A DNA stretch of 62,956 nucleotides, the filler included, from Octopus bimaculoides (taxonomy: Eukaryota): assembly GCF_001194135.2 (NCBI RefSeq). It is 4 parts of 4 records of this genome, joined end to end, with 100 filler letters (N's around TTAATTAATTAA, not from the genome) between each part and the next. Parts side by side here need not be neighbours in the genome. Positions count along the whole stretch, not along the records: positions 1 to 11,399 come from NC_068990.1; 3 more parts are not named here. One strand, 5' to 3'. The translations under genes and the position numbers were made by a program. Of this stretch, positions 1 through 11,522 are shown one piece after another; within the stretch, counting starts at the first letter, position 1, and the number at the start of each line of letters is the position of its first letter. The notes under the pieces are model-generated. The model had not been told where the DNA came from and searched no databases. It worked only from the letters and a program-made list of their open reading frames with translations.

Positions 1-12
1 GTGGTGGTGGTG

Positions 13-78
<66 letters not shown>
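1..78 (+). repeat. (GTG)n/(GTA)n microsatellite
   Basis: Direct reading. Confidence 0.95.
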
Positions 79-604
79 ACATGATTACCAGACACTCTAA
101 TTTCATTGTACGCTATTGCTAGAGATAGACTTCTCTCCCGTCATCCCTTGTGACGTAGCTATCAAAGGTCACCTGTCGTCAAGCTTTTGCAGGAACTTGT
201 GCTTATTAGACTGCGAGACTCCACACTGCTCTTTCGCTATTTTACATAATTCTGAGGTATATACTGCATAAATCGCATCTTTAATTCTGTATTAATTCTT
301 GTTACAATTTCTTCCTCTTCATTTTCAAACTTCATTTCAGCTTTACCCCGTGTATATGTCGAACTTCAGTCTTTTCTTTTTGTCTTTTCTTTTCCTTTTT
401 TTTTCTTTTTCATCAATAATCCCTTTCGTTGCTAAATTAAATTCCAGGGTATTCTAGTAACGATGTTAAATATCTACCACAAAATAGAACTGATATTTTC
501 AGCAAAATAAATTCGACTTATCTCAAGAGAAAATAGTTGTCGTTAAAAATGACATTCCTTAATAAAAGATAAATCAATATTTTTAAAAAAACTGCTTCCC
601 GCAG

Positions 605-910
605 TTATTATTTATTTATGCGCCCTTTTCAAGCCTAGCCAGGCTCATGGGCCCGGTTTCCCGGGTTCTATGGCGCATGTGCTCCCCAGCTGGACGGGAC
701 GCCAGTCCATCGCAGCTTTACTCATGAAACAGTGAGAGAAAGTTGGGGCGAAAGAGTACAACAGGGGTCACCACCACCCCCTGCCGGAGCCTCGTGGAGC
801 TTTAGGTGGTTTCGCTCAATAAACACACACAACGCCCGGTCTGGGAATCGAAACCGCGATATTCCGACCGCGAGTCCGCTGCCCTAACCACTGGGCCATT
901 GCGCCTCCAC
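605..910 (-). mobile_element. tRNA-derived SINE, V/Meta-like central domain, (ATAA)n tail
   Basis: Minus strand starts GTGGAGGCGCAATGGCCCAGTGGTTAGGG (A box) with GGTTTCGATTCCC (B box). Body contains GCGATGGACTGGCGTCCCGTCCAG. A related copy lies at 10203-10514. Domain name is from memory. Confidence 0.85.
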
Positions 911-1048
911 GCATCCCGCAGTTAAGGGTAATGAAATTTTGAGTGGATATTGCTGGTATTGTAGTTATGGCCGTCTCGTCTTTTTATCAGACATTGAATT
1001 ACATTATCATTTTCGCGATTCCCTTTCTTTAAAACAATAGCATGTGTA

Positions 1049-1092
<44 letters not shown>

Positions 1093-2522
1093 TTTATCTA
1101 CTATTTCTAGCCAGTCAAGCGACCTCATTGAGGTTCTGTCATCTTTAAATTACGTCTGATGCTATTTCATTATTATACTATTGTAGTCGCCTCATGTAGT
1201 CTTCTCAGGAATATATGCTTTTCCACGTATATCTCCGGTTTTTTATTCTTCCCCCTTTCCCCCTCCTCCCCACAGAATTCATAATTTCTGTTAAATCTCT
1301 GTAGAAAAGATGTACTTATAAGGAAATTCTCTCCCGACCACTCAGTTCTGACTTATCGACTCGAGTTGACATATAGCTTGGTTTGCATTATGTGTCTTAT
1401 CATGAAAGTAAATTCGCTTCTTTCATACCTCTGTCCAGCCTAAATATTTCCCTGTCTACGCATAAAAATTTCGTAGAAATTTTACTAGCTAGGCGCTGGT
1501 GTTTTATCGGTTTTCTGACTAAATCACTATTCCCAAGAGGACTTTTGCTTTTATATTTTATTTATAATCAAAACATTAATATGTATGTTCAAGAATTCCT
1601 AGCGTTTTATACATTACTAGACACTACGCACGGATTTATTTTAATCTTCCTCAATATGGAAGAATTGCTAACATCGCTCTCTGTCTTTCTGTCTGTCCGT
1701 CTCTCAATTTATCTCTTTCTAGTCTATTCTTTTTCTCCCATTCTCTCCCTCTTTCTCTATCTCACCCCTTCTCTCTTTCTCTCTCTCTCCATCTCTCCCT
1801 CTCTCTTTAATCATTCGTTTTTTTTCTGTTCATATCACTTTTTCTCGACTTAGATTTTTCTGAATAAGGTTTTTCACTTCATTATACAACAATCTACTCT
1901 GTTTGAAGAGTGTATTGATACCCTATTTACATAATCGACCAGTTTTCGCTATTTATCTCAATTGTTGGTGAGCGAAATAATAAAATCAAAAGTCAAACNN
2001 NNNNNNNNNNNNNNNNNNNNNNNNNNNNNNNNNNNNNNNNNNNNNNNNNNNNNNNNNNNNNNNNNNNNNNNNNNNNNNNNNNNNNNNNNNNNNNNNNNNN
2101 NNNNNNNNNNNNNNNNNNNNNNNNNNNNNNNNNNNNNNNNNNNNNNNNNNNNNNNNNNNNNNNNNNNNNNNNNNNNNNNNNNNNNNNNNNNNNNNNNNNN
2201 NNNNNNNNNNNNNNNNNNNNNNNNNNNNNNNNNNNNNNNNNNNNNNNNNNNNNNNNNNNNNNNNATGCTTTGTCTACTTCTCTTAACAGTATTTACTATT
2301 CCGTAGACAAATGGAAGATGATCATTTTGGTTAGCAGTGCTAATATATTTCTTCTTTTAACCACACAAAGACGAAATTTTGCCGCATAGAGCAGTCTTTC
2401 CGTTACGGTCCATCTCTTTAAAGCTGGTATTTCATGCTAATTTGTTCATTCAAATACATAGAAAATTCGACTTTGTGAATAAAAACAGCAACAGCAGCAG
2501 CAGCAGTGGCAGTAGTAATGGT

Positions 2523-2560
<38 letters not shown>

Positions 2561-3915
2561 TTGTTGTTACAATGTATCAGATCAACTCCAATTGAGCAAA
2601 CAAATAACAGGAGGCGATCCAGCGTATAAGACTATCAGAGTTAATCTATCGAATGACGCATCCGTTCCTTATATTAAGACAGCATGGCGTGACTTCAGAA
2701 AAAATATATTAAAAAAAAAAGTAGCTGTTATTTCTACTAGGTTGAATGACCACGTCAAGGTTACTTTCGTTGCCTCACAGAAGTTTGTGTTGTTGTCATT
2801 GATAATTTAATCCGACACCTCTCCTCGGAGACGCCATTACGCTATATATATATTATTGTATGTTGTCGTTCAGTTTCGACTTTACACGGAACAATAGCAA
2901 CATGTAAATAGTTATACGATGGAGAAAAGTATTTACTACATAGCCTTCATCCTCGACAAAATCAGCACTCCTCTTCAATCGTCATTCATTCTTTTTCTTT
3001 ATACATAGAAAGCGTTAAATCGCATTAGAGCGAAAGATTGATACCATTTCTAAGTGACAGCTGCAGTTTACCTTGAGCTGAGCTGGCATAACAAGTCAGC
3101 TTTGTCAATTTAGACGCATTGAAAGGATATGCCCATGAGATTAAAATTAAGTGTATATTTAACTAGATCGGTTGCTGTCTTTCTGTATTGTGGGTGTGTA
3201 AGAGTAGGAGTGTTTACATTGTGTATTCTATATTGTNNNNNNNNNNGGGGGGGGGGGGGGTTATACGTGAGTGATGGAGGTTGTTTGATGTAACGTGGGT
3301 GCAACAGCACACATTCGTTGCAAGTACGATGTTGTTAAAGAGAAGACTTATTTGATAGACAAGGAAGGTTATTGTTGTTGTTGCAGTTATGGCCGCCAGG
3401 CAGAACGAAGAACCATCACATTCTGTTTGTTTATGCTATCTCGACAATCAGATTTATCAACTCAACTTTAGTGGCATTGTTATGACAAGGCTTGGTAAAA
3501 GATTCTAATCCTAGTTCACCGATTAGCTGTGTATCAAATCCAAGTTTTAACCGAAAATGTCATTGTTTTTTCATAATGTTTTTATCTTGTCGGAAAAATA
3601 AGTTATTGACGACTACTCAGTCGGTAAAGTATCAGCTTTTTTCTGCAACTCGTGGTGGATCAGGTGTGTGTATCATACTATAGGCAGGATACTGTCTGAT
3701 TCAATATATTTTTCGCTTTATTTCTTGGAAAGATAAGAAAATCAACATTTTTACAGTAAATACATCTAGAAACCGTCATTATGTAAAACAATTATTTTAT
3801 CGACATTTATTTACGCTCCTCACAAATCTTAATAATGATTAGCACCAAACCGCATTATATGAGTGTGTCTGTGTTTGTGTGTATATATATGTGTGTGTAT
3901 ATATATGCGTGTACA

Positions 3916-3972
<57 letters not shown>

Positions 3973-4230
3973 NNNNNNNNNNNNNNNNNNNNNNNNNNNN
4001 NNNNNNNNNNNNNNNNNNNNNNNNNNNNNNNNNNNNNNNNNNNNNNNNNNNNNNNNNNNNNNNNNNNNNNNNNNNNNNNNNNNNNNNNNNNNNNNNNNNN
4101 NNNNNNNNNNNNNNNNNNNNNNNNNNNNNNNNNNNNNNNNNNNNNNNNNNNNNNNNNNNNNNNNNNNNNNNTATCACCCTATTGCTTCATCGGAGCTTCA
4201 AAGATGAAGAGCACTTCAGTTTTGAATCGC

Positions 4231-4338
4231 CATTGAAGCTCTGATAAAGCTCTGATGAAGCTCTGGTGAAGCTCTGATGAAGCTCTGGTGAAGCTATGTG
4301 TTCATTGCATCTTATAGCGAAACAGCTGTAAGCTAATG
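4231..4338 (+). ncRNA. Minimal type I hammerhead ribozyme motif (PLE-type) with 5x tandem-amplified core
   Basis: CATTGA-AGCT-(CTGATGA-like x5)-AGCT...AGC-GAAA-CAGCTG-TA-AGCTAATG. Stem III is palindromic (CAGCTG) and stem I is catt(ga)agct/agctaatg. Confidence 0.7.
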
Positions 4339-4494
4339 AACTTCGTTACATAATTTCTTATTCGGTGTCGTTTGTTTAATTTCTTATTACTGCTATGTAC
4401 TCGACTGACCCTTTTTTTCTTGAGACATATATATATATACATATGTACATTGAGTTCTAACACCAGGTTATTAGCATCCCTATGCTTAAATGAG

Positions 4495-4495
4495 A

Positions 4496-4527
<32 letters not shown>

Positions 4528-4549
4528 TTATCATCACCATCATCATCAC

Positions 4550-4630
<81 letters not shown>

Positions 4631-4631
4631 T
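4495..4631 (+). repeat. (TTA)n-(CAT)n compound microsatellite
   Basis: Direct reading. Confidence 0.95.
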
Positions 4632-4636
4632 GTTAT

Positions 4637-5147
4637 GAGCGTAGCTTAGTAGTCAGGGTATTCTGCTCCCGATCGTAAGCTCGCGAGTTCGATTCCTGGT
4701 GGAATGTTGTGTCCTTGAGCAAGACTCTTTATTTCACGTTGCACAGATTTGCTTGTCAGTTGTTTGACCTTAACCAGTTGAGCATATCTCTTAATGGCTG
4801 ACGATATGTGCATCTCTGATCATGAGCAGAAGTAGAAGAGGAGCATCATAGCCATGTACTGAGAGGAATTATTTTGGGTTTGGATAATTCACCTCTGGAA
4901 ACATGGGTGTTTTGTTCAACATCCTTTTGAGCGGGATGGGCTATTCGACCTGAAGAAAATTCTAACTGGGCCCCACCTGCAAGGTCATGCGCTGTTTATC
5001 TTGATACGAGATCACCATGTCTCACACATATGGTTGTGATGCATGTGTCTAGCGTACCCTTACCAGACGGGTAGTCATGGTGGGTATAATGGGCTTCGTA
5101 TATTTGTACCCCAGTGTCACTTTGAAGGACGAACTACTCTCTCATTC

Positions 5148-5180
<33 letters not shown>
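4637..5180 (+). mobile_element. tRNA-headed CORE-like SINE with long 3' body and (AAT)n tail
   Basis: Head GAGCGTAGCTTAGTAGTCAGGG...GAGTTCGATTCC, then TGTGTCCTTGAGCAAGACTCTTTATTTCACGTTGC (same domain as 59555-59881). Ends in (AAT)n at ~5148-5180. Confidence 0.75.
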
Positions 5181-5181
<1 letters not shown>

Positions 5182-5354
5182 GGCACACGGCCTGAAATTT
5201 GGTGGGAGGGAGCTAGTCAATTACATCAATCCCAGTGTTCAATTGGTACTTATTTCATCAACCTCGAAAGGATGAAGGGCAAATATATGTGTGTGTGTGT
5301 GTATTACTCTTTTACTTGTTTCAGTCATTTGACTGCGGCCATGCTGGAGCACTG

Positions 5355-5360
<6 letters not shown>
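5181..5360 (-). mobile_element. Degenerate SINE fragments (Nin-like body and 3' tail)
   Basis: Reverse complement matches the body of the SINE at 10929-11140 and the tail of the SINE at 7688-7851. Confidence 0.65.
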
Positions 5361-5397
<37 letters not shown>

Positions 5398-6149
5398 TAC
5401 ATACATGTATATATATATGAGTTATCTTTGATGGTAAAAAGGCCTTCGACTTTGTTCCGTGCGAGGTTCTTTTTTTTTTTAAAGTGAATATTCTACTCAT
5501 TCTGTATAATATTTATAGCTTTATCTACTTCAAGTTCCACCATTTTATACGATATGTATATGTATATATGTGTGTGTGTGTGCGCGCATGCACATACACA
5601 CGTATATGGTTTAGTGCTAATCATTTTAAAGATATGTGAGGAGCGTAAATAAAGATGAAGGGATTTCTTACATAACCCGTTGAAATAATTGTGTGGCAGT
5701 CATTATTATATCGTTGATAATAAGCAATTAAGTAAGAAGCTGCTTCCGTGCACAAGAATGACCATAGAAATAAATATGTATTCCTATGCATTTATTATGT
5801 TTAACTGTTTATATATTACGTAGGTAGAAAGGTGTACTTATGAGATACTGAAGAATATTTTTGCGTACTTATGGTAATAGCTGAAGATTTACAATATGGA
5901 AGACATAGAGAATGATCTCATTAAATGTATTATGCTGCATGTGTTCTGCATTGTTATAAAAAATAAGAGAAAAAAAGAGCACTCAGAGAGCGCAAACCTC
6001 CGCCAAGGCAACACCAATGTCCTCTCAACGATTAGCTATGAGATGATTCTTAAAATGAGAATATCTGAAATAAACTCAACTGCTCTCACAAACGAGAATA
6101 CTAAAAATGAACCCGACCGCTCTCAAATATTAAGTAAAAAAAAAAAAAC

Positions 6150-6356
6150 GGAACGATAATCCAGAATCCTTGTCCGGTACCTGATCGATCCCAAAGTCTA
6201 ATCAGTTTGTGCCAGTCACGAGGCCAAACATCCCTGAAAGTTTCATCCGAGTCCATTCAGCGCTTCTTGGGGTATCTTGTCCATGGACAAACAAACAAAC
6301 AAGCAAATGCGACTGAAAACAATACGTCCGCCTTAGTGAAGACGGAGGTAATAAAA
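6150..6356 (+). mobile_element. Possible non-autonomous Helentron/HINE-like repeat 3' end
   Basis: (CAAA)n run followed by terminal hairpin TCCGCC-ttagtgaa-GACGGAGGTAAT. No matching 5' end was identified. Confidence 0.3.
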
Positions 6357-6561
6357 CAGTTGAATAGAGAGATGCGATGTCTGTCGATCTTAGAACACAA
6401 GGAAGATTAATCTTTGTCTAACATGTTTTCATCCTCTCATCCACTTTATTGGGTTTAATACTTTTGTTGCCATATTTCTGTTTAAATACACCGCTTTGCT
6501 TTTGTTAATTTTTGAAAATAATTAAGAATTTAGTAATATAACTGATATTATTTAGCTGATG

Positions 6562-6812
6562 TAGGTTGGTGAGCTGGCAGAAACGTTAGCACGCCGGACG
6601 AAATGCTTAGCGATATTTCGTCTGCCGTTACGTTCTGAGTTCAAATTCCTTTCGTCTGCCGCTACGTTCTGAGTTCAAATTCCGCCGAGGTCGACTTTGC
6701 CTTTCATCCTTTCGGGGTTGATAAATTAAGTACCAGTTACGCACTGGGGTCGATGTAATCGACTTAATCCCTTTGCCTGTCTTTGTTTGTCCCAGACAGA
6801 CAAACAGGAAGA
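6562..6812 (+). mobile_element. tRNA-derived Nin-like SINE with 34-bp internal duplication
   Basis: GGTGAGCTGGCAGAAACGTTAGC head and GCCTTTCATCCTTTCGGGGTTGATAAATTAAGTACCAG body. Segments 6616-6649 and 6650-6683 are a tandem duplicate. Confidence 0.9.
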
Positions 6813-7384
6813 AAGAAAGAAAGGAAGAAAGAAAACAACTGCAGCAAATCCAGCGAATGACGTTGAATAGAACGGGAAAAAAAACGTTCACAAATTAGAT
6901 TCAGTTCATACACGTGAATATTTGTGTAATGGCAAAATAACATTATGTATAATATACATGTTCGTATTGGCAGGCCAATGTACTTTCCTGCTGCATTTAA
7001 TAGCAATTTCCTTTCTAGGAACAATAGTTCTTTTGTAAAGTATCTATTTGTGTTTGAACAGATAGTCTTGGAGTTGTGTACGAAGAGGTAATTTTCTTTA
7101 GATATTTGTGTATGAAGATAAGCTAATTTTTTCTCTCTTTCTTTTTTGTCTTATTTATACAAGTTATATAATGTTTTGTATGTGTCTTCAAAGTACAGCA
7201 ACGTTTGGTGCACGGAATGTGTAAAGGTTTTTGTACAACATCACTGACGTAAGACCAGGTACTGATGTCGATTGAAACATCGGTTTTAACTGTTTGTGAT
7301 CTCGGTAGCATTTGTGGTCAAGGCTAGACATATACTGCTGCAGTCTGAGCTCATAGGTGGACAGATCGTGATCTCGTATCGAGA

Positions 7385-7675
7385 ACAAAACAACATGTTT
7401 TAAATCTCTGAGCCAGAGAAATAAATTAACAGTACTGGATAGTAATGTTTATATTCCAACATAATGTGGTAGTCCTGTAAAGGGCGATGTTACTGTTGTT
7501 TTAGCCCCAGGAAAACATCTTTCCCAGCTGGCTAACGACACAGTCTGTGTTTGTATATAGCATTTGCAAGGGAGGTCATCGCTCCCATCTCTAGTTTTAC
7601 ATGATATTCATTGTTACTGTATTTCTCTCGCCACTGACTGAGGACGGGTAACATTCAGACAACTAGGTCTGTGAG
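7385..7675 (+). repeat. Structured-module repeat copy 1 (module 7466-7586) plus degenerate hammerhead (7638-7669)
   Basis: GATGTTACTGTTG-TTTTAGCCCCAGG...CCAGCTGGC is shared with 11548, 18618 and ~27290. Left flank (AACAGTACT..TAGTAA..CCAACATAAT) is shared with 27240-27278. Confidence 0.8.
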
Positions 7676-7687
7676 TATATATATATA

Positions 7688-8177
7688 ATCTTTTACTCTT
7701 TTACTTGTTTCCGTCATTTGACTGCAGCCATGCTGGAGCACCACCTTTAGTCGAGCAAATCGACCCCGGGACTTATTCTTTGTAAGCCTAATACTTATTC
7801 TATCGATCTCTTTTGCCGAACTGCTAATTGACAGGGACATAAACACACCAGCATATATATATATATATATATANNNNNNNNNNNNNNNNNNNNNNNNNNN
7901 NNNNNNNNNNNNNNNNNNNNNNNNNNNNNNNNNNNNNNNNNNNNNNNNNNNNNNNNNNNNNNNNNNNNNNNNNNNNNNNNNNNNNNNNNNNNNNNNNNNN
8001 NNNNNNNNNNNNNNNNNNNNNNNNNNNNNNNNNNNNNNNNNNNNNNNNNNNNNNNNNNNNNNNNNNNNNNNNNNNNNNNNNNNNNNNNNNNNNNNNNNNN
8101 NNNNNNNNNNNNNNNNNNNNNNNNNNNNNNNNNNNNNNNNCTGGGACGTAAACACACCAACATCGATTGTCAAGCGG
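7688..8177 (-). mobile_element. SINE variant (GCTCCAGCATGGCCGCAGTCAAATGAC-type tail), split by a gap
   Basis: Same family as 50255-50470 and 33195-33365. Confidence 0.8.
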
Positions 8178-8189
8178 AAAATCTATTGT

Positions 8190-10075
8190 TCGGTTATAAG
8201 ACCTCCAGGTTTCTCATCAGTTTCCAAAGATGTTTTCTTTTTCCCGTTTTTGAATAGACATTCACATCTATTGGACATCTGATCTCCACAACGGTGTACG
8301 ACCTTTGCTCGCAGTCCCGCACAACTACATCTGACTTACCCTTGTTGTGCTTACATTAGATGGCTGTTTTTATTGAAATGTTCCAACAGAATTCTTTATT
8401 TTTAAAAGTGTCGATACAATCTGGCTTTAGTGTGCTTTGGATGTTACCGTCAAAATATTCCTTCTTTTATATAGCATTGTAGACCGACTTAGTGACAATG
8501 GCATGTTTCGTTAGCAAGTAGTATCTTACGGACATTTTCTAACAGCTATTGACGATGTGTGTGAAGACTTCCACACTGTTACATCACAATCGACATTTTC
8601 TATAACAGCGCTGAGTATTAAAGGCATCCTCATCTCATTTTCTTTTTATTACATATTCAGTCATTATCTTTCATTCTTTGACAGCAAATGCATATACTTC
8701 TTGGTTAGATGTGATATATTTATTTCTTTATTAATTTATTAATTTATTAAGATGTGATATATTTATCACAAGTCCAGCAAAGGCTGTTTTTCTTTATTAA
8801 TTTATTAATTTATTAAGATGTGATATATTTATCACAAGTCCAGCAAAGGCTGTTTTTACTGTCGATATGTTTTTGGAGAGACATTTACACAATACTCACT
8901 CTGTCGTTCATCTAATCACTTTGCATCAGACTTGTATTGTTTGTTTACACTCGAGATCCCTCTCCAAAATGTGTCTGGATCATTCGAGGTAGGATCTTTT
9001 ACAACCTTTATGTTATGGCTTTCCATATTGCGATACATCGTTTCTGAGTTTCTTACAAATTTGCTATTGATGTTTTTTTGTTCTAGTAGGATTTCTTTTA
9101 TAGCGTAAGTGCTCACCTGTCGCTTACAGTTCAGGTTTAAGGGAAATTAACTTACCCGTTAGTATTTCTTGTCGACAAATCCCATAGATTTTAGATAATC
9201 CATAATATAGGTGCAGCAGGTGGTTCGTGAATTTCTTATTCACTTTGCACTTAATGATAGTCTCTAACTGTCCAATATTTTCCGTGACTCTGTCAATAAG
9301 TGTCTCGAGAGAGGAATCTATTTTCGTTGTTTCTCCTGACTGCGATCGATCTCCGCTACTTCCAACTATTGGCGAATGGTAATTGAAGAACAATATAGCA
9401 GAATATTCAATGTCCAAAAGTTAGGATTTTCAATCTCTGCCAATTGTTCTTCAACTATTTGGTCCATCGCAGATAACATCAGGTTGGTCGGTTTTCTATC
9501 GATTCGTGTGGTAATTGCTCTCTCATGAATTGTTGTTAATGTAGATGTTTTGTTTAGGCTTCACTCATTATTTCTGTTTGCTCGTAATTGATAACTACTC
9601 GCTCGTTTAATGGCAGTATGTTCGTCTCAGTTTTATTGTTGATGCATCAATCGCGTTCCACGTTGTTAACGATTTTCTCAGAAGAATTCACTGGTCTGCT
9701 CTGACTCTTATATGTTATGAGATTCGGATAGTCTATGGGAATAACAGCCAGTTTATTCCCAACTGGAACCTTAGCAAGGCTTAGTAATTTTATTGTCTAT
9801 GAGTGAAGAACAGAATCAAACGCCTTTTTTATAGTTTGGAGAGATATAGTTAGCAGATTTCGTAGGGAGGCGCTGCTTTGCTTTCTTAAGGACAGCTTTT
9901 TTGGATGAGTTCTTTAGCACAGCCCCAAACTCCTTCCTTTCCCTCTGCTCGCTTTTCATTTAACATGCTATGTGTTTCACAGTGATCCTAAAAGGAATGC
10001 ATTCGAGCAACCTGTATATAATTTCTATATAACATTCAAGCACGCTATAGACCTGTAGTTTTCGGCCACATGTGT
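8190..10075 (-). mobile_element. Degenerate RLE-type non-LTR retrotransposon (R4/NeSL-like), RT plus restriction-like endonuclease
   Basis: My minus-strand translations: VAENYRSIACLNVI*KLYTG (~10068-10010), EQRGKEGVWGC-like (~9950), YKK/AFDSVLHS (frameshifted, ~9820), CWNISIKTAI*CKHNKGKSDVVVRD...VVEIRCPIDVNV (~8390-8255). Stops and frameshifts throughout. Confidence 0.75.
8707..8857 (+). repeat. 66-bp tandem duplication (8726-8791, 8792-8857) plus a partial third copy
   Basis: Direct reading; the two units are identical. Confidence 0.9.
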
Positions 10076-10202
10076 CTGCTAGTGTTTAGCTACTATTGAT
10101 GTACGTACGTATGCTGACCAGTTCGGTGCATCTATCTCAGTGTTCATTGCTGAGGTTTCCTGATTTCTTAGTTGTCTGACACTGAAGTTCGAATAGTTGG
10201 GT

Positions 10203-10514
10203 GGTTGTTGTTGTTGTTGTTTCTCGAGCCATATCTAACACATAAGAGCCGCTTTCCCCGGTTTCATTGGCGTATTGGTTCCCCACCGGGACGGAACGGC
10301 GGTCTGTCGCAAGTAAGCTGCTAGATGCAGGAGGAAAGCGAGAGAGAAAGTTGTGGCGAAAGAGCCAGCAGAGATTCGCCATTACCTCCCGCCGAAGCCG
10401 CGTGGAGCTTAGGCGTTTCGCTCATAAACACACACATCGTCCGGTCTGAGATTCGAACTCACGATCTCTCGACCGCGTGTCCGCTGCTCTAACCACTAGG
10501 CAATGTGCCTCCAC
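10203..10514 (-). mobile_element. tRNA-derived SINE related to 605-910, (AAC)n tail
   Basis: Minus-strand head GTGGAGGCACATTGCCTAGTGGTTAGAGC...GAGTTCGAATCTC. Confidence 0.85.
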
Positions 10515-10760
10515 GTTGAGGTATCGTAGATCCCAGAAATTCTTCATCCTTTTCGTGTAAACCTATCGAAGGATCTTCCCTTGTCTTTTTTATAGAATTT
10601 ATATAAGCCTCGGTTCAATTCAAAGCTCCACTGAAACTTCTGTCCATAGTTACGTTCCTTGCGATAGTTGACCCTAGTCTCCTGTCCAGCATTGATGTCT
10701 ATATTATTAATCCTTCTTAAGGCGACGAACTGGAGTCATCATTTTTTCTACTCTAAGCAT

Positions 10761-10894
10761 AAGGCTCGAAATTTTTGGGGAGGGAGCCAGTCGATTAGAT
10801 CGACCGCAGTACGCAACTGGTATTTAATTTATCGATCGAAATACCGCTTAGCATTTCGCCCGGCATTCTAACGTTTCTGCCAGTTCACCGTCTT
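10761..10894 (-). mobile_element. Nin-like SINE with internal deletion
   Basis: Reverse complement has the AAGACGGTGAACTGGCAGAAACGTTAG head. The B box and central part are missing. Confidence 0.8.
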
Positions 10895-10928
10895 AAACTG
10901 GAGGCGTATGATATATAACCAAATATAT

Positions 10929-11140
10929 AAGGCGGTGAGCTAGCAGAATCGTTTGCACGCCGGGCAAAATGCTTAGCAGTATTTCGTCTATCCTTACGTT
11001 TTGAGTTCAAATTCCGCCGAGGTCGACTTCACTTTTCATCCTTTCAGGGTCGACAAATTAATTACCAGTGAAACACTGGAGGGTCTATGTAATCGACTAG
11101 TTCCCTCTCTTCAAAACTTCAGGCCTTCGTCTCATAAAGC
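10929..11140 (+). mobile_element. Nin-like SINE (AAAACTTCAGGCCTT-type tail)
   Basis: AAGGCGGTGAGCTAGCAGAATCG head, GAGTTCAAATTCC B box. Confidence 0.9.
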
Positions 11141-11184
11141 GAAATTTCTATACATCTTAAATTTCACAGAAGAATGTGTGGTGA

Positions 11185-11261
11185 GGGCAGTTTAGCTTGA
11201 TCGGTCTAGAGCACCGCGCCGCGTAATCACGGAGGTGTGAGTTCGTGTCTCATAGCTGGCC
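11185..11261 (+). pseudogene. tRNA-like sequence (pseudogene or SINE head; possible CGT anticodon)
   Basis: 77 nt GGGCAGTTTAGCTTGATCGGTCTAGAGC...GTGAGTTCGTGTCTCATAGCTGGCC. D and T arms are recognisable, acceptor and anticodon stems are mismatched, and a T-run follows ~10 nt downstream. Confidence 0.5.
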
Positions 11262-11522
11262 GCCAACACACTTTTTCTCTGCAAAATAGGGGTAGCTTAT
11301 CCTGTTCAGGCTATACTATATTAGCATTATCCCGCGTTTGAGAATTTAAAATCACTTCTTTAACTTTCTAAGACATCTCAACGCTTCTAAAAGCAAACTN
11401 NNNNNNNNNNNNNNNNNNNNNNNNNNNNNNNNNNNNNNNNNNNTTAATTAATTAANNNNNNNNNNNNNNNNNNNNNNNNNNNNNNNNNNNNNNNNNNNNA
11501 TATATATATATATATATATATA

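What the first reader, a model, noticed from the sequence alone, without database searches (positions are those of the whole stretch)
7466..7586. Candidate undescribed structured RNA/ssDNA module with compensatory stem changes (copies at 7466, 11548, 18618, ~27290)
Seen: four diverged copies keep stems by covariation. Hairpin B: GGAAA-acatc-TTTCC / GGAGA-acatc-TCTTCC / GGAGG-acatct-CCTCC / GGAGAC-atc-GTCTCC. Hairpin A: GTCC..GGGC / ACCC..GGGT / ACCCC..GGGGT / GTCCT..AGGAC. Hairpin D: GGGAG..CTCCC / GGGAAG..CTTCCC / AGGG..CCCT. There is also a GACACA..TGTGTC hairpin. ACATC is invariant in all four copies and is complementary to an upstream GATGT (AATGT in copy 4); pairing these would compete with hairpin B, suggesting a switch or pseudoknot. 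TTTAGCCCCAGG and CCAGCTGGCT are invariant. Inference: ordinary MITE interiors decay without covariation, so this looks like a structure under selection, possibly a ribozyme or a replication/processing signal. I could not map it cleanly onto HDV, twister, pistol or hammerhead.
Basis: partly seen in the sequence, partly recalled or inferred. Interest (0 to 1): 0.8.

Follow-up and report, generated by a model that had tools for sequence, protein, structure and literature searches.

The report
Hairpin-rich interior of octopus repeat
A 120-base stretch of octopus junk-rich DNA really does carry several small hairpins and sits between two 20-base inverted repeats, so it is most likely the inside of a small mobile element; whether its stems are kept by selection could not be tested because no second copy could be reached.

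Summary
The window is octopus-type genomic DNA packed with SINEs, microsatellites and assembly gaps. The two "invariant" boxes are the two arms of one longer hairpin (7492-7544), whose tip is "hairpin B". "Hairpin C" competes with that stem and is predicted to form rarely. This copy reads TGTGTT, not TGTGTC.

My piece holds only one copy. None was found in about 70 kb of other cephalopod DNA that I could fetch, or in three public contig collections. The covariation claim therefore could not be tested.

Single-copy statistics are modest. Hairpin density is in the top 1.5% of local windows. The central hairpin scores z -2.4 on the plus strand and -3.4 on the minus strand, but 15 windows in this same piece fold as well. 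Rfam gives no match, so no known ribozyme, miRNA or tRNA is present.

A 20-nt inverted repeat (7412-7431 / 7612-7631; 1 of 500 shuffles reach it) with a 5/6 flanking direct repeat brackets the module. My best reading (confidence 0.45) is the interior of a MITE-like non-autonomous transposon. The rivals are a Helitron or Helentron end, a retroposon tail, chance, and a free-standing RNA. Interest is low to moderate.

The parts
7406..7411 (.). CTCTGA, left copy of a possible 6-bp target-site duplication
   Evidence: Lies directly outside the left inverted-repeat arm. It matches CACTGA at 7632-7637 in 5 of 6 positions (read). The chance of this at a fixed position is about 0.005, but several duplication lengths were tried.
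7412..7431 (+). Left arm of the inverted repeat, GCCAGAGAAATAAATTAACA
   Evidence: Found. Local alignment score 25 against shuffles of 15.5 +/- 2.4; 1 of 500 shuffles reach it. Inverted repeats of this quality occur about once per 5-8 kb in octopus DNA.
7472..7485 (.). Hairpin A, GTCCT-gtaa-AGGGC
   Evidence: Pair probability 0.96-0.99.
7486..7491 (.).
   Evidence: Seen in the sequence. The alternative helix has probability 0.004, and forcing it costs 3.1 kcal/mol.
7492..7544 (-). Central long imperfect hairpin (inverted repeat). It has three stems: outer ACTGT/ACAGT, lower TTAGCC/GGCTAA, and the tip GGAAA/TTTCC. It contains both 'invariant' boxes, 7500-7511 and 7524-7533.
   Evidence: Plus strand -17.0 kcal/mol, z -2.42. 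Minus strand -21.7 kcal/mol, z -3.40, with 0 of 200 shuffles as good; there it has 8+6 contiguous pairs, including two G-U pairs that are A-C mismatches on the plus strand. Against the genomic background it ranks at 0.6%.
7510..7524 (.). Hairpin B, GGAAA-ACATC-TTTCC, which is the tip of the central hairpin. The loop ACATC is at 7515-7519.
   Evidence: Pair probability 0.96-0.97.
7537..7551 (.). Hairpin C, GACACA-gtc-TGTGTT. It is an alternative to the outer stem of the central hairpin.
   Evidence: Present as a possible stem, but pair probability is only 0.01-0.03.
7570..7586 (.). Hairpin D, a 17-nt palindrome GGGAG-gtcatcg-CTCCC
   Evidence: Pair probability 0.97-0.99.
7591..7594 (+). CTAG followed by T, with its last base 8 nt past the end of hairpin D. 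This is a possible Helitron-type 3' end (rival reading).
   Evidence: Seen in the sequence. The criteria are quoted from PMC4067079. It could easily be chance.
7612..7631 (-). Right arm of the inverted repeat, TGTTACTGTATTTCTCTCGC
   Evidence: 17 of 20 bases are complementary to 7412-7431, with 180 nt between the arms.
7632..7637 (.). CACTGA, right copy of the possible target-site duplication
   Evidence: 5 of 6 identical to 7406-7411 (sequence).
7656..7671 (.). Small palindrome CAGAC-aactag-GTCTG, 25 nt past the right arm and followed by a (TA)n run. It is relevant only to the Helentron/HINE reading.
   Evidence: Seen in the sequence. HINE criteria are from PMC4067079.

Best explanation
The stretch 7466-7586 is the interior of one copy of a short, non-coding, MITE-like mobile element of about 220 bp (7412-7631) in an octopus genome.

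Proposed anatomy and mechanism:
- The unit is bounded by 20-nt inverted repeats and probably by a 6-bp target-site duplication.
- Such elements are moved in trans by a transposase that recognises the ends.
- The interior is built of short palindromes around one central 53-nt imperfect inverted repeat.
- These palindromes can fold as hairpins in single-stranded DNA or in read-through RNA. They are a property of the element's DNA, not an independent RNA gene.
- If the arms really change together between copies, the likeliest causes are descent from a few diverged master copies that each kept the palindrome, plus palindrome-correcting template switching or symmetric protein-binding half-sites.

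Shown here: the hairpins, the inverted repeat, the octopus origin, and the absence of any known RNA family.
For: - The window shares SINE families at 75-97% identity with O. vulgaris and O. bimaculoides loci. It is full of microsatellites and gaps.
- An inverted repeat at 7412-7431 / 7612-7631 brackets the module: 17/20 complementary, score 25 against 15.5 +/- 2.4, reached by 1 of 500 shuffles.
- The same inverted-repeat criterion picks out a mariner-type MITE in the O. vulgaris rhodopsin locus.
- A 5/6 direct repeat lies directly outside both arms.
- There is no coding capacity; the longest ORF is 40 aa.
- The 236-nt unit folds with z -2.5 as RNA and -1.8 as DNA.
- The two 'invariant' boxes are the two arms of one palindrome, as expected of a DNA-level inverted repeat.
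- There is no Rfam match.
- Template switching is documented to create and maintain perfect hairpins with apparent compensatory changes (PMC8794818).
Against: - No second copy was seen by me. None is in the other 11 kb of the window, in 24-kb loci of O. vulgaris and O. bimaculoides, or in a decapodiform contig. Repeat status and boundaries are therefore unproven.
- The inverted repeat is imperfect. Repeats of this quality occur about once per 5-8 kb, so chance bracketing has a probability of about 0.01, not zero.
- A 6-bp duplication fits no common superfamily neatly, and the superfamily is unknown.
- The central hairpin is clearly better on the minus strand because of G-U pairs. That hints at RNA rather than DNA.
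- A Helitron-like end at 7594 would contradict the proposed boundaries.
Confidence: 0.45

Rival explanations
1. It belongs to a rolling-circle transposon (Helitron, or a Helentron-derived HINE). The hairpins would be single-stranded-DNA signals, with hairpin D acting as the 3' terminator palindrome.
For: - Hairpin D is a 17-nt palindrome (7570-7586). The element would end 8 nt later in CTAG (7591-7594) followed by T. Canonical Helitrons have a 16-20 nt palindrome about 11 bp from a 3' CTRR and insert between A and T (PMC4067079).
- Alternatively, the anatomy resembles a HINE: subterminal inverted repeats, a small palindrome (7656-7671) 25 nt past the right arm, and a microsatellite.
- Helitrons and unclassified repeats are reported in O. 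vulgaris (PMC13282606).
Against: - The Helitron reading and the HINE reading exclude each other.
- CTRR followed by T within a few bases of one of several hairpins is expected by chance in tens of percent of cases (my estimate).
- No 5' TC end could be located.
- HINE subterminal repeats are 12-15 bp and lie 2-4 nt from a T-rich 5' end. Here the arm is 20 nt and no T run precedes it.
- The (TA)n and T run at 7674-7694 belong, at least in part, to the tail of the neighbouring SINE.
Confidence: 0.15
2. It is the 3' part of a retroposon (a LINE 3' UTR or a SINE body or tail) transcribed from the minus strand. The central stem-loop, with its constant GAUGU loop, would be the RNA structure recognised by the partner reverse transcriptase.
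For: - The central hairpin is stronger on the minus strand, with G-U pairs (z -3.4).
- SINE/LINE 3' tails with conserved stem-loops and compensatory changes are documented in molluscs (PMC4824008). So are conserved SINE stem-loop domains (PMC4758252).
- LINEs and SINEs make up about 25% of an octopus genome.
- 8150-10100 on the minus strand carries a few RT-like motifs by eye.
Against: - No tRNA, 5S or 7SL head, and no RNA family match.
- No A-rich or short-repeat tail at the minus-strand end.
- The RT-like region gives no Pfam hit, either per frame or stitched, and no phmmer hit among 1.8 billion proteins.
- A SINE and a gap separate that region from the element.
- The flanking inverted repeat and direct repeat are left unexplained.
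Confidence: 0.15
3. There is nothing special here. It is ordinary AT-rich non-coding octopus DNA in which several short hairpins and one inverted repeat occur by chance, and the 'copies' are weak or over-read similarities.
For: - I found only one copy anywhere.
- The 121-nt fold is not better than shuffles.
- 15 windows in this piece fold as well as the central hairpin.
- 1.5% of windows reach the same hairpin count, and the region was chosen by eye from about 30 kb.
Against: - Three independent oddities coincide within 230 nt: hairpin density in the top 1.5%, a central hairpin in the top 0.6%, and a bracketing inverted repeat with p about 0.002-0.01.
Confidence: 0.15
4. It is a free-standing structured RNA (a self-cleaving ribozyme, a switch or another non-coding RNA) carried by a repeat.
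For: - Several stable hairpins with high pair probabilities.
- Strand asymmetry caused by G-U pairs.
Against: - No match to any of 4227 Rfam families at E<=10, including all the ribozyme classes held in Rfam.
- No multi-helix junction or pseudoknot is predicted; the fold is a row of independent hairpins.
- The proposed switch helix has probability 0.004.
- Not among the octopus miRNA sequences held in the supplement of PMC9699675.
Confidence: 0.05

Closest known systems
MITEs (miniature inverted-repeat transposable elements, non-autonomous class II)
   Same: Small size (about 220 bp), no ORF, AT-rich, 20-nt inverted repeats at the ends, a possible short target duplication, and a palindrome-rich interior that folds as a hairpin.
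   Different: The superfamily is unknown. The inverted repeat is imperfect (17/20). A 6-bp duplication is unusual. Multi-copy status and boundaries were not demonstrated here. The interior is a row of separate hairpins rather than one long palindrome.
Helitron 3' terminal hairpin, and Helentron/HINE (DINE-1-like) elements (PMC4067079)
   Same: A 17-nt palindrome a few bases before CTAG followed by T. Alternatively, subterminal inverted repeats plus a small 3' palindrome and a microsatellite. Stems that vary while the hairpin is kept are typical of these ends.
   Different: No 5' TC or T-run end was found. Arm length and distances do not fit the HINE ranges. The covarying hairpin B lies about 75 nt from the putative end, not at it.
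LINE/SINE 3'-tail stem-loops recognised by reverse transcriptase (for example CR1-type tails in bivalves, PMC4824008) and the conserved Vhc stem-loop of mollusc SINEs (PMC4758252)
   Same: A stem-loop in a dispersed repeat with a constant loop and a variable, compensated stem. It is better formed as RNA on one strand.
   Different: No pol III head, no tail repeats and no partner LINE were identified. Inverted repeats flank the unit.
Hairpins made and maintained by replication template switching (PMC8794818)
   Same: Perfect short stems whose two arms change together without any need for selection on RNA.
   Different: That is a mutational mechanism rather than an element family. It was not testable here without the other copies.

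Membership tests
MITE (TIR-bounded non-autonomous DNA transposon) | Terminal inverted repeats | tested here: met
   7412-7431 / 7612-7631, 17/20 complementary; 1 of 500 shuffles reach the score. The background rate is about 1 per 5-8 kb.
MITE (TIR-bounded non-autonomous DNA transposon) | Target-site duplication directly outside the TIRs | tested here: inconclusive
   CTCTGA 7406-7411 against CACTGA 7632-7637, 5/6 identical. The length was chosen after looking at the sequence.
MITE (TIR-bounded non-autonomous DNA transposon) | Many copies with the same boundaries | tested here: inconclusive
   No second copy in the window, L002, L003 or L005. A whole octopus genome could not be searched.
MITE (TIR-bounded non-autonomous DNA transposon) | Short and non-coding | tested here: met
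   About 220 bp; the longest overlapping ORF is 40 aa.
Canonical Helitron | 16-20 nt palindrome about 11 bp from a 3' CTRR end, with host T after it | tested here: met
   17-nt palindrome at 7570-7586, CTAG at 7591-7594, T at 7595 (criteria). This could be chance.
Canonical Helitron | 5' TC end after a host A; copies end exactly at these termini | not testable with these tools
   Needs other copies or empty sites.
Helentron-associated HINE / DINE-1-like | 12-15 bp subTIRs lying 2-4 nt from a T-rich 5' end and 38-60 bp from the 3' end; a 5-10 bp palindrome 8-35 bp from the 3' end; insertion in TT | tested here: inconclusive
   Right arm to the T run at about 7691 is about 59 bp. The palindrome 7656-7671 lies about 18 bp before it. 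However, the arms are 20 nt, there is no T run at the 5' side, and the 3' region overlaps the neighbouring SINE tail.
SINE | Pol III head derived from tRNA, 5S or 7SL | tested here: not met
   No tRNA by ARAGORN. No Rfam hit in 7380-7700 at E<=10.
SINE / LINE 3' tail | Tail shared with a partner LINE, or A-rich or short tandem repeats at the 3' end | tested here: inconclusive
   No tail repeats at either end of the unit. The neighbouring RT-like stretch is not confirmed by Pfam or phmmer.
Known self-cleaving ribozymes and other Rfam families (hammerhead, twister, pistol, hatchet, HDV-like and others) | Match to the family covariance model | tested here: not met
   The only hit is a structureless lncRNA model at E=7.8 and 9 bits. 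Nothing was found in the whole-window scan.
Annotated octopus microRNA precursors | Sequence present among published precursors | tested here: not met
   Core strings are absent from the 10 supplementary files of PMC9699675 held as text. There are no Rfam miRNA hits at this site.

The most novel reading that the evidence does not exclude
The central 53-nt hairpin (constant lower stem, constant ACATC/GAUGU loop, covarying tip), together with the flanking hairpins, is a cis-acting folded signal. It could act as single-stranded DNA or as minus-strand RNA. An as yet undescribed cephalopod mobile-element family would need it for its own propagation, and it would be kept by selection across diverged subfamilies.
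Probability: 0.2. Interest if true: 0.5.

Novelty: new member of a known kind. Interest (0 to 1): 0.25.

Why it matters
Octopus genomes are about half to two-thirds repeats, and many of their families are unclassified (PMC13282606). If this module is a selected fold shared by diverged subfamilies, it would mark the cis-signal of an uncharacterised cephalopod transposon. It would also give a handle on that element's mechanism: rolling-circle terminator, transposase site, or RT recognition loop. If it is only a palindrome-rich MITE interior, it is routine repeat annotation. In that case it is a useful caution that the arms of a DNA palindrome can mimic RNA covariation.

Tried and rejected
Attempts to find more copies:
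1. Translated the element (52-aa open minus frame) and a SINE frame and searched the 5.8-billion protein index. No candidates.
2. Ran phmmer of a neighbouring 97-aa ORF against 1.8 billion representatives. 0 hits.
3. Scanned exact DNA patterns for the two boxes:
   - Metagenome contigs gave one chance hit inside a bacterial gene.
   - Prokaryotic genomes and viral contigs gave nothing.
4. Scanned for an abundant octopus SINE to find host-contaminated contigs. Nothing.
5. Fetched octopus DNA through rhodopsin, using the sequence from memory. This gave O. vulgaris, O. bimaculoides and O. sinensis loci and a decapodiform contig. No copy was found. The O. sinensis locus was not saved to the scripting folder, so only the exact pattern was checked there.
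6. Looked up window ORFs by exact sequence. Not on record.
7. Searched the literature and supplements for the sequence strings. Only unrelated primers turned up, with none in the octopus repeat and miRNA papers.

Rejected ideas:
- Known ribozyme or RNA family.
- tRNA-derived head.
- A confirmed LINE next door.
- The GATGT/ACATC switch as a favoured fold.
- The mir-297, mir-466 and mir-1277 hits elsewhere in the window, which are TA/TG microsatellites.

Full report
**Context.** The piece (1-11399) is animal DNA at 16-49% G+C. It has four runs of N, many microsatellites and several tRNA-like SINE copies. Its repeats match O. vulgaris and O. bimaculoides loci at 75-97% identity, but they match nothing in a decapodiform cephalopod contig. 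The window therefore comes from an Octopus-type genome. Published annotation puts such genomes at 43-66% repeats, with LINEs and SINEs near 25% and many families unclassified (PMC13282606).

**The observation.**
- Hairpin A at 7472-7485.
- GATGT at 7486-7490.
- TTTAGCCCCAGG at 7500-7511.
- Hairpin B at 7510-7524, with the loop ACATC.
- CCAGCTGGCT at 7524-7533.
- GACACA..TGTGTT at 7537-7551.
- Hairpin D at 7570-7586.

Three corrections matter.
1. TTAGCC (7501-7506) pairs with GGCTAA (7530-7535), and ACTGT (7492-7496) pairs with ACAGT (7540-7544). The two "invariant" boxes and hairpin B are therefore one long imperfect hairpin, 7492-7544.
2. That long stem uses GACACAG.
3. The proposed GATGT/ACATC pairing has probability 0.004 and costs 3.1 kcal/mol to force.

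**Chance.** The 121-nt stretch does not fold better than shuffles (z -0.95 and -1.64). Its hairpin count of 5 is reached by 1.5% of 783 octopus windows and by 0.1% of shuffles. The central 62 nt scores z -2.4 on the plus strand. On the minus strand it scores z -3.4, because two A-C mismatches become G-U pairs there and give 14 stacked pairs. Only 0.6% of 5984 background windows fold as well, but 15 of those lie in this same 11-kb piece, mostly inside G+C-rich SINEs. For a site chosen by eye, this is suggestive and no more.

**Copies.** There is one copy in my piece.
- Translated searches.
- Pattern scans of three contig collections.
- Octopus DNA reached through the rhodopsin gene.
- Exact ORF look-ups.
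- Full-text and supplement searches.

None produced a copy. The covariation claim, which is the core of the finding, is therefore untested here. The tools hold no searchable eukaryotic genome.

**Anatomy around the module.** A 20-nt inverted repeat, 7412-7431 / 7612-7631 (17/20 complementary), brackets the module almost symmetrically. Its alignment score is reached by 1 of 500 shuffles. Repeats of this quality occur about once per 5-8 kb in the octopus DNA I hold. One of them, in the rhodopsin locus, is a recognisable mariner-type MITE. Directly outside the arms lie CTCTGA and CACTGA, identical in 5 of 6 positions. The 236-nt unit folds with z -2.5 as RNA. No ORF longer than 40 aa crosses it.

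**Two other anatomies can be read into the same bases.**
1. *Helitron.* Hairpin D is a 17-nt palindrome, and the sequence reaches CTAG plus T 8 nt later. This is the canonical Helitron 3' end as defined in PMC4067079. It could also be chance, and it contradicts the inverted-repeat boundaries.
2. *HINE.* The arms, a small palindrome at 7656-7671 and a (TA)n run loosely resemble HINE/DINE-1 elements. However, arm length and the 5' end do not fit, and the (TA)n run is at least partly the tail of the adjacent SINE.

**A retroposon tail remains possible.** It is favoured by the better minus-strand hairpin and by published mollusc precedents. Against it, there is no pol III head and no tail repeat. 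The RT-like motifs I saw by eye at 8150-10100 are not confirmed by Pfam or phmmer.

**Known RNA families.** Rfam gives nothing at this site, either in the whole-window scan at E<=1 or in a focused scan at E<=10. The site is not a member of any described ribozyme, riboswitch, miRNA or tRNA family. It is also absent from the octopus miRNA supplement I could read.

**Mechanism.** My best reading (confidence 0.45) is a palindrome-rich interior of a MITE-like element mobilised through its inverted ends. If the arms of hairpin B do change together between copies, three causes need no RNA selection:
- A few diverged master copies, each amplified many times, so four copies are not four independent tests.
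- Template switching at replication, which copies one arm onto the other (PMC8794818).
- Symmetric half-sites of a dimeric DNA-binding protein.

A selected fold, whether an ssDNA signal of a rolling-circle element or an RNA loop read by a reverse transcriptase, is the interesting alternative. I put the probability of a genuinely selected cis-fold at about 0.2 and of a free-standing RNA or ribozyme at about 0.05.

**Verdict.** The interpretation cannot be judged with these tools. The site is most likely a new member of a known kind, namely hairpin-bearing non-autonomous transposons. Interest is 0.25.

Noticed in passing
window 6559-6772, 10925-11106 (+), 5182-5283 and 10744-10890 (-): Several copies of one tRNA-like octopus SINE family, 84-85% identical to each other. 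They match O. vulgaris and O. bimaculoides loci at up to 93-97% identity over short stretches. Two neighbouring copies at 10744-11110 lie in inverted orientation.
   Followed up: partly
window 640-910 and 10240-10510: Two copies (83% identical over 81 nt) of a second, G+C-rich SINE-like repeat on the minus strand with a tRNA-like head. These account for most of the best-folding 62-nt windows in the piece.
   Followed up: no
window 7691-7860 / 8141-8176 and 5303-5358: A third repeat family (TTTTACTCTTTTACTTGTTTCAGTCATTTGACTGCGGCCATGCTGGAGCAC...) matches octopus loci at 85-94% identity. In both copies it abuts a TA/TG microsatellite, which looks like its minus-strand 3' tail. One copy is interrupted by an assembly gap and lies only about 50 nt from the inverted-repeat unit.
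   Followed up: partly
window 8150-10230, minus strand: Scattered RT-like motifs seen by eye (NYRSIACLNVI..KLYTG, IKKAFDSVLHS) suggest a badly decayed LINE. Neither Pfam (per frame and stitched) nor phmmer of the 97-aa ORF confirms it.
   Followed up: yes
window 11186-11261 (+): An Rfam tRNA hit exactly at the gathering score (29 bits) that ARAGORN does not call. It is probably the head of another SINE or a tRNA pseudogene.
   Followed up: no
window 8723-8854: A perfect tandem duplication of a 66-nt unit (100% identical), so it is recent.
   Followed up: no
window 4223-4299: An 11-nt tandem array (TGAAGCTCTGR)n of about seven units directly after an assembly gap.
   Followed up: no
window 3237-3260: A 10-N gap followed by a run of 14 G. 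This looks like a sequencing or assembly artefact rather than biology.
   Followed up: no
window 3886-3975, 5286-5424, 5542-5624: Sub-threshold Rfam hits to mir-297, mir-466 and mir-1277 are TA/TG microsatellites, not miRNA genes.
   Followed up: yes
L002 12252-12402 (O. vulgaris rhodopsin gene range): A 150-bp unit with mariner-type inverted ends (..TTAGGTTGTCCCAAAAGTTCG..) lies inside the rhodopsin gene range. It appears to be a mariner MITE in the intron.
   Followed up: no
L005 (ENA metagenome assembly ERZ21867824, contig ctg122970l, 450 kb): A contig filed in a metagenome assembly encodes a cephalopod rhodopsin (77% identical to octopus) and is covered with short prokaryote-style gene calls. 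It is host (decapodiform) DNA in a metagenome assembly.
   Followed up: partly
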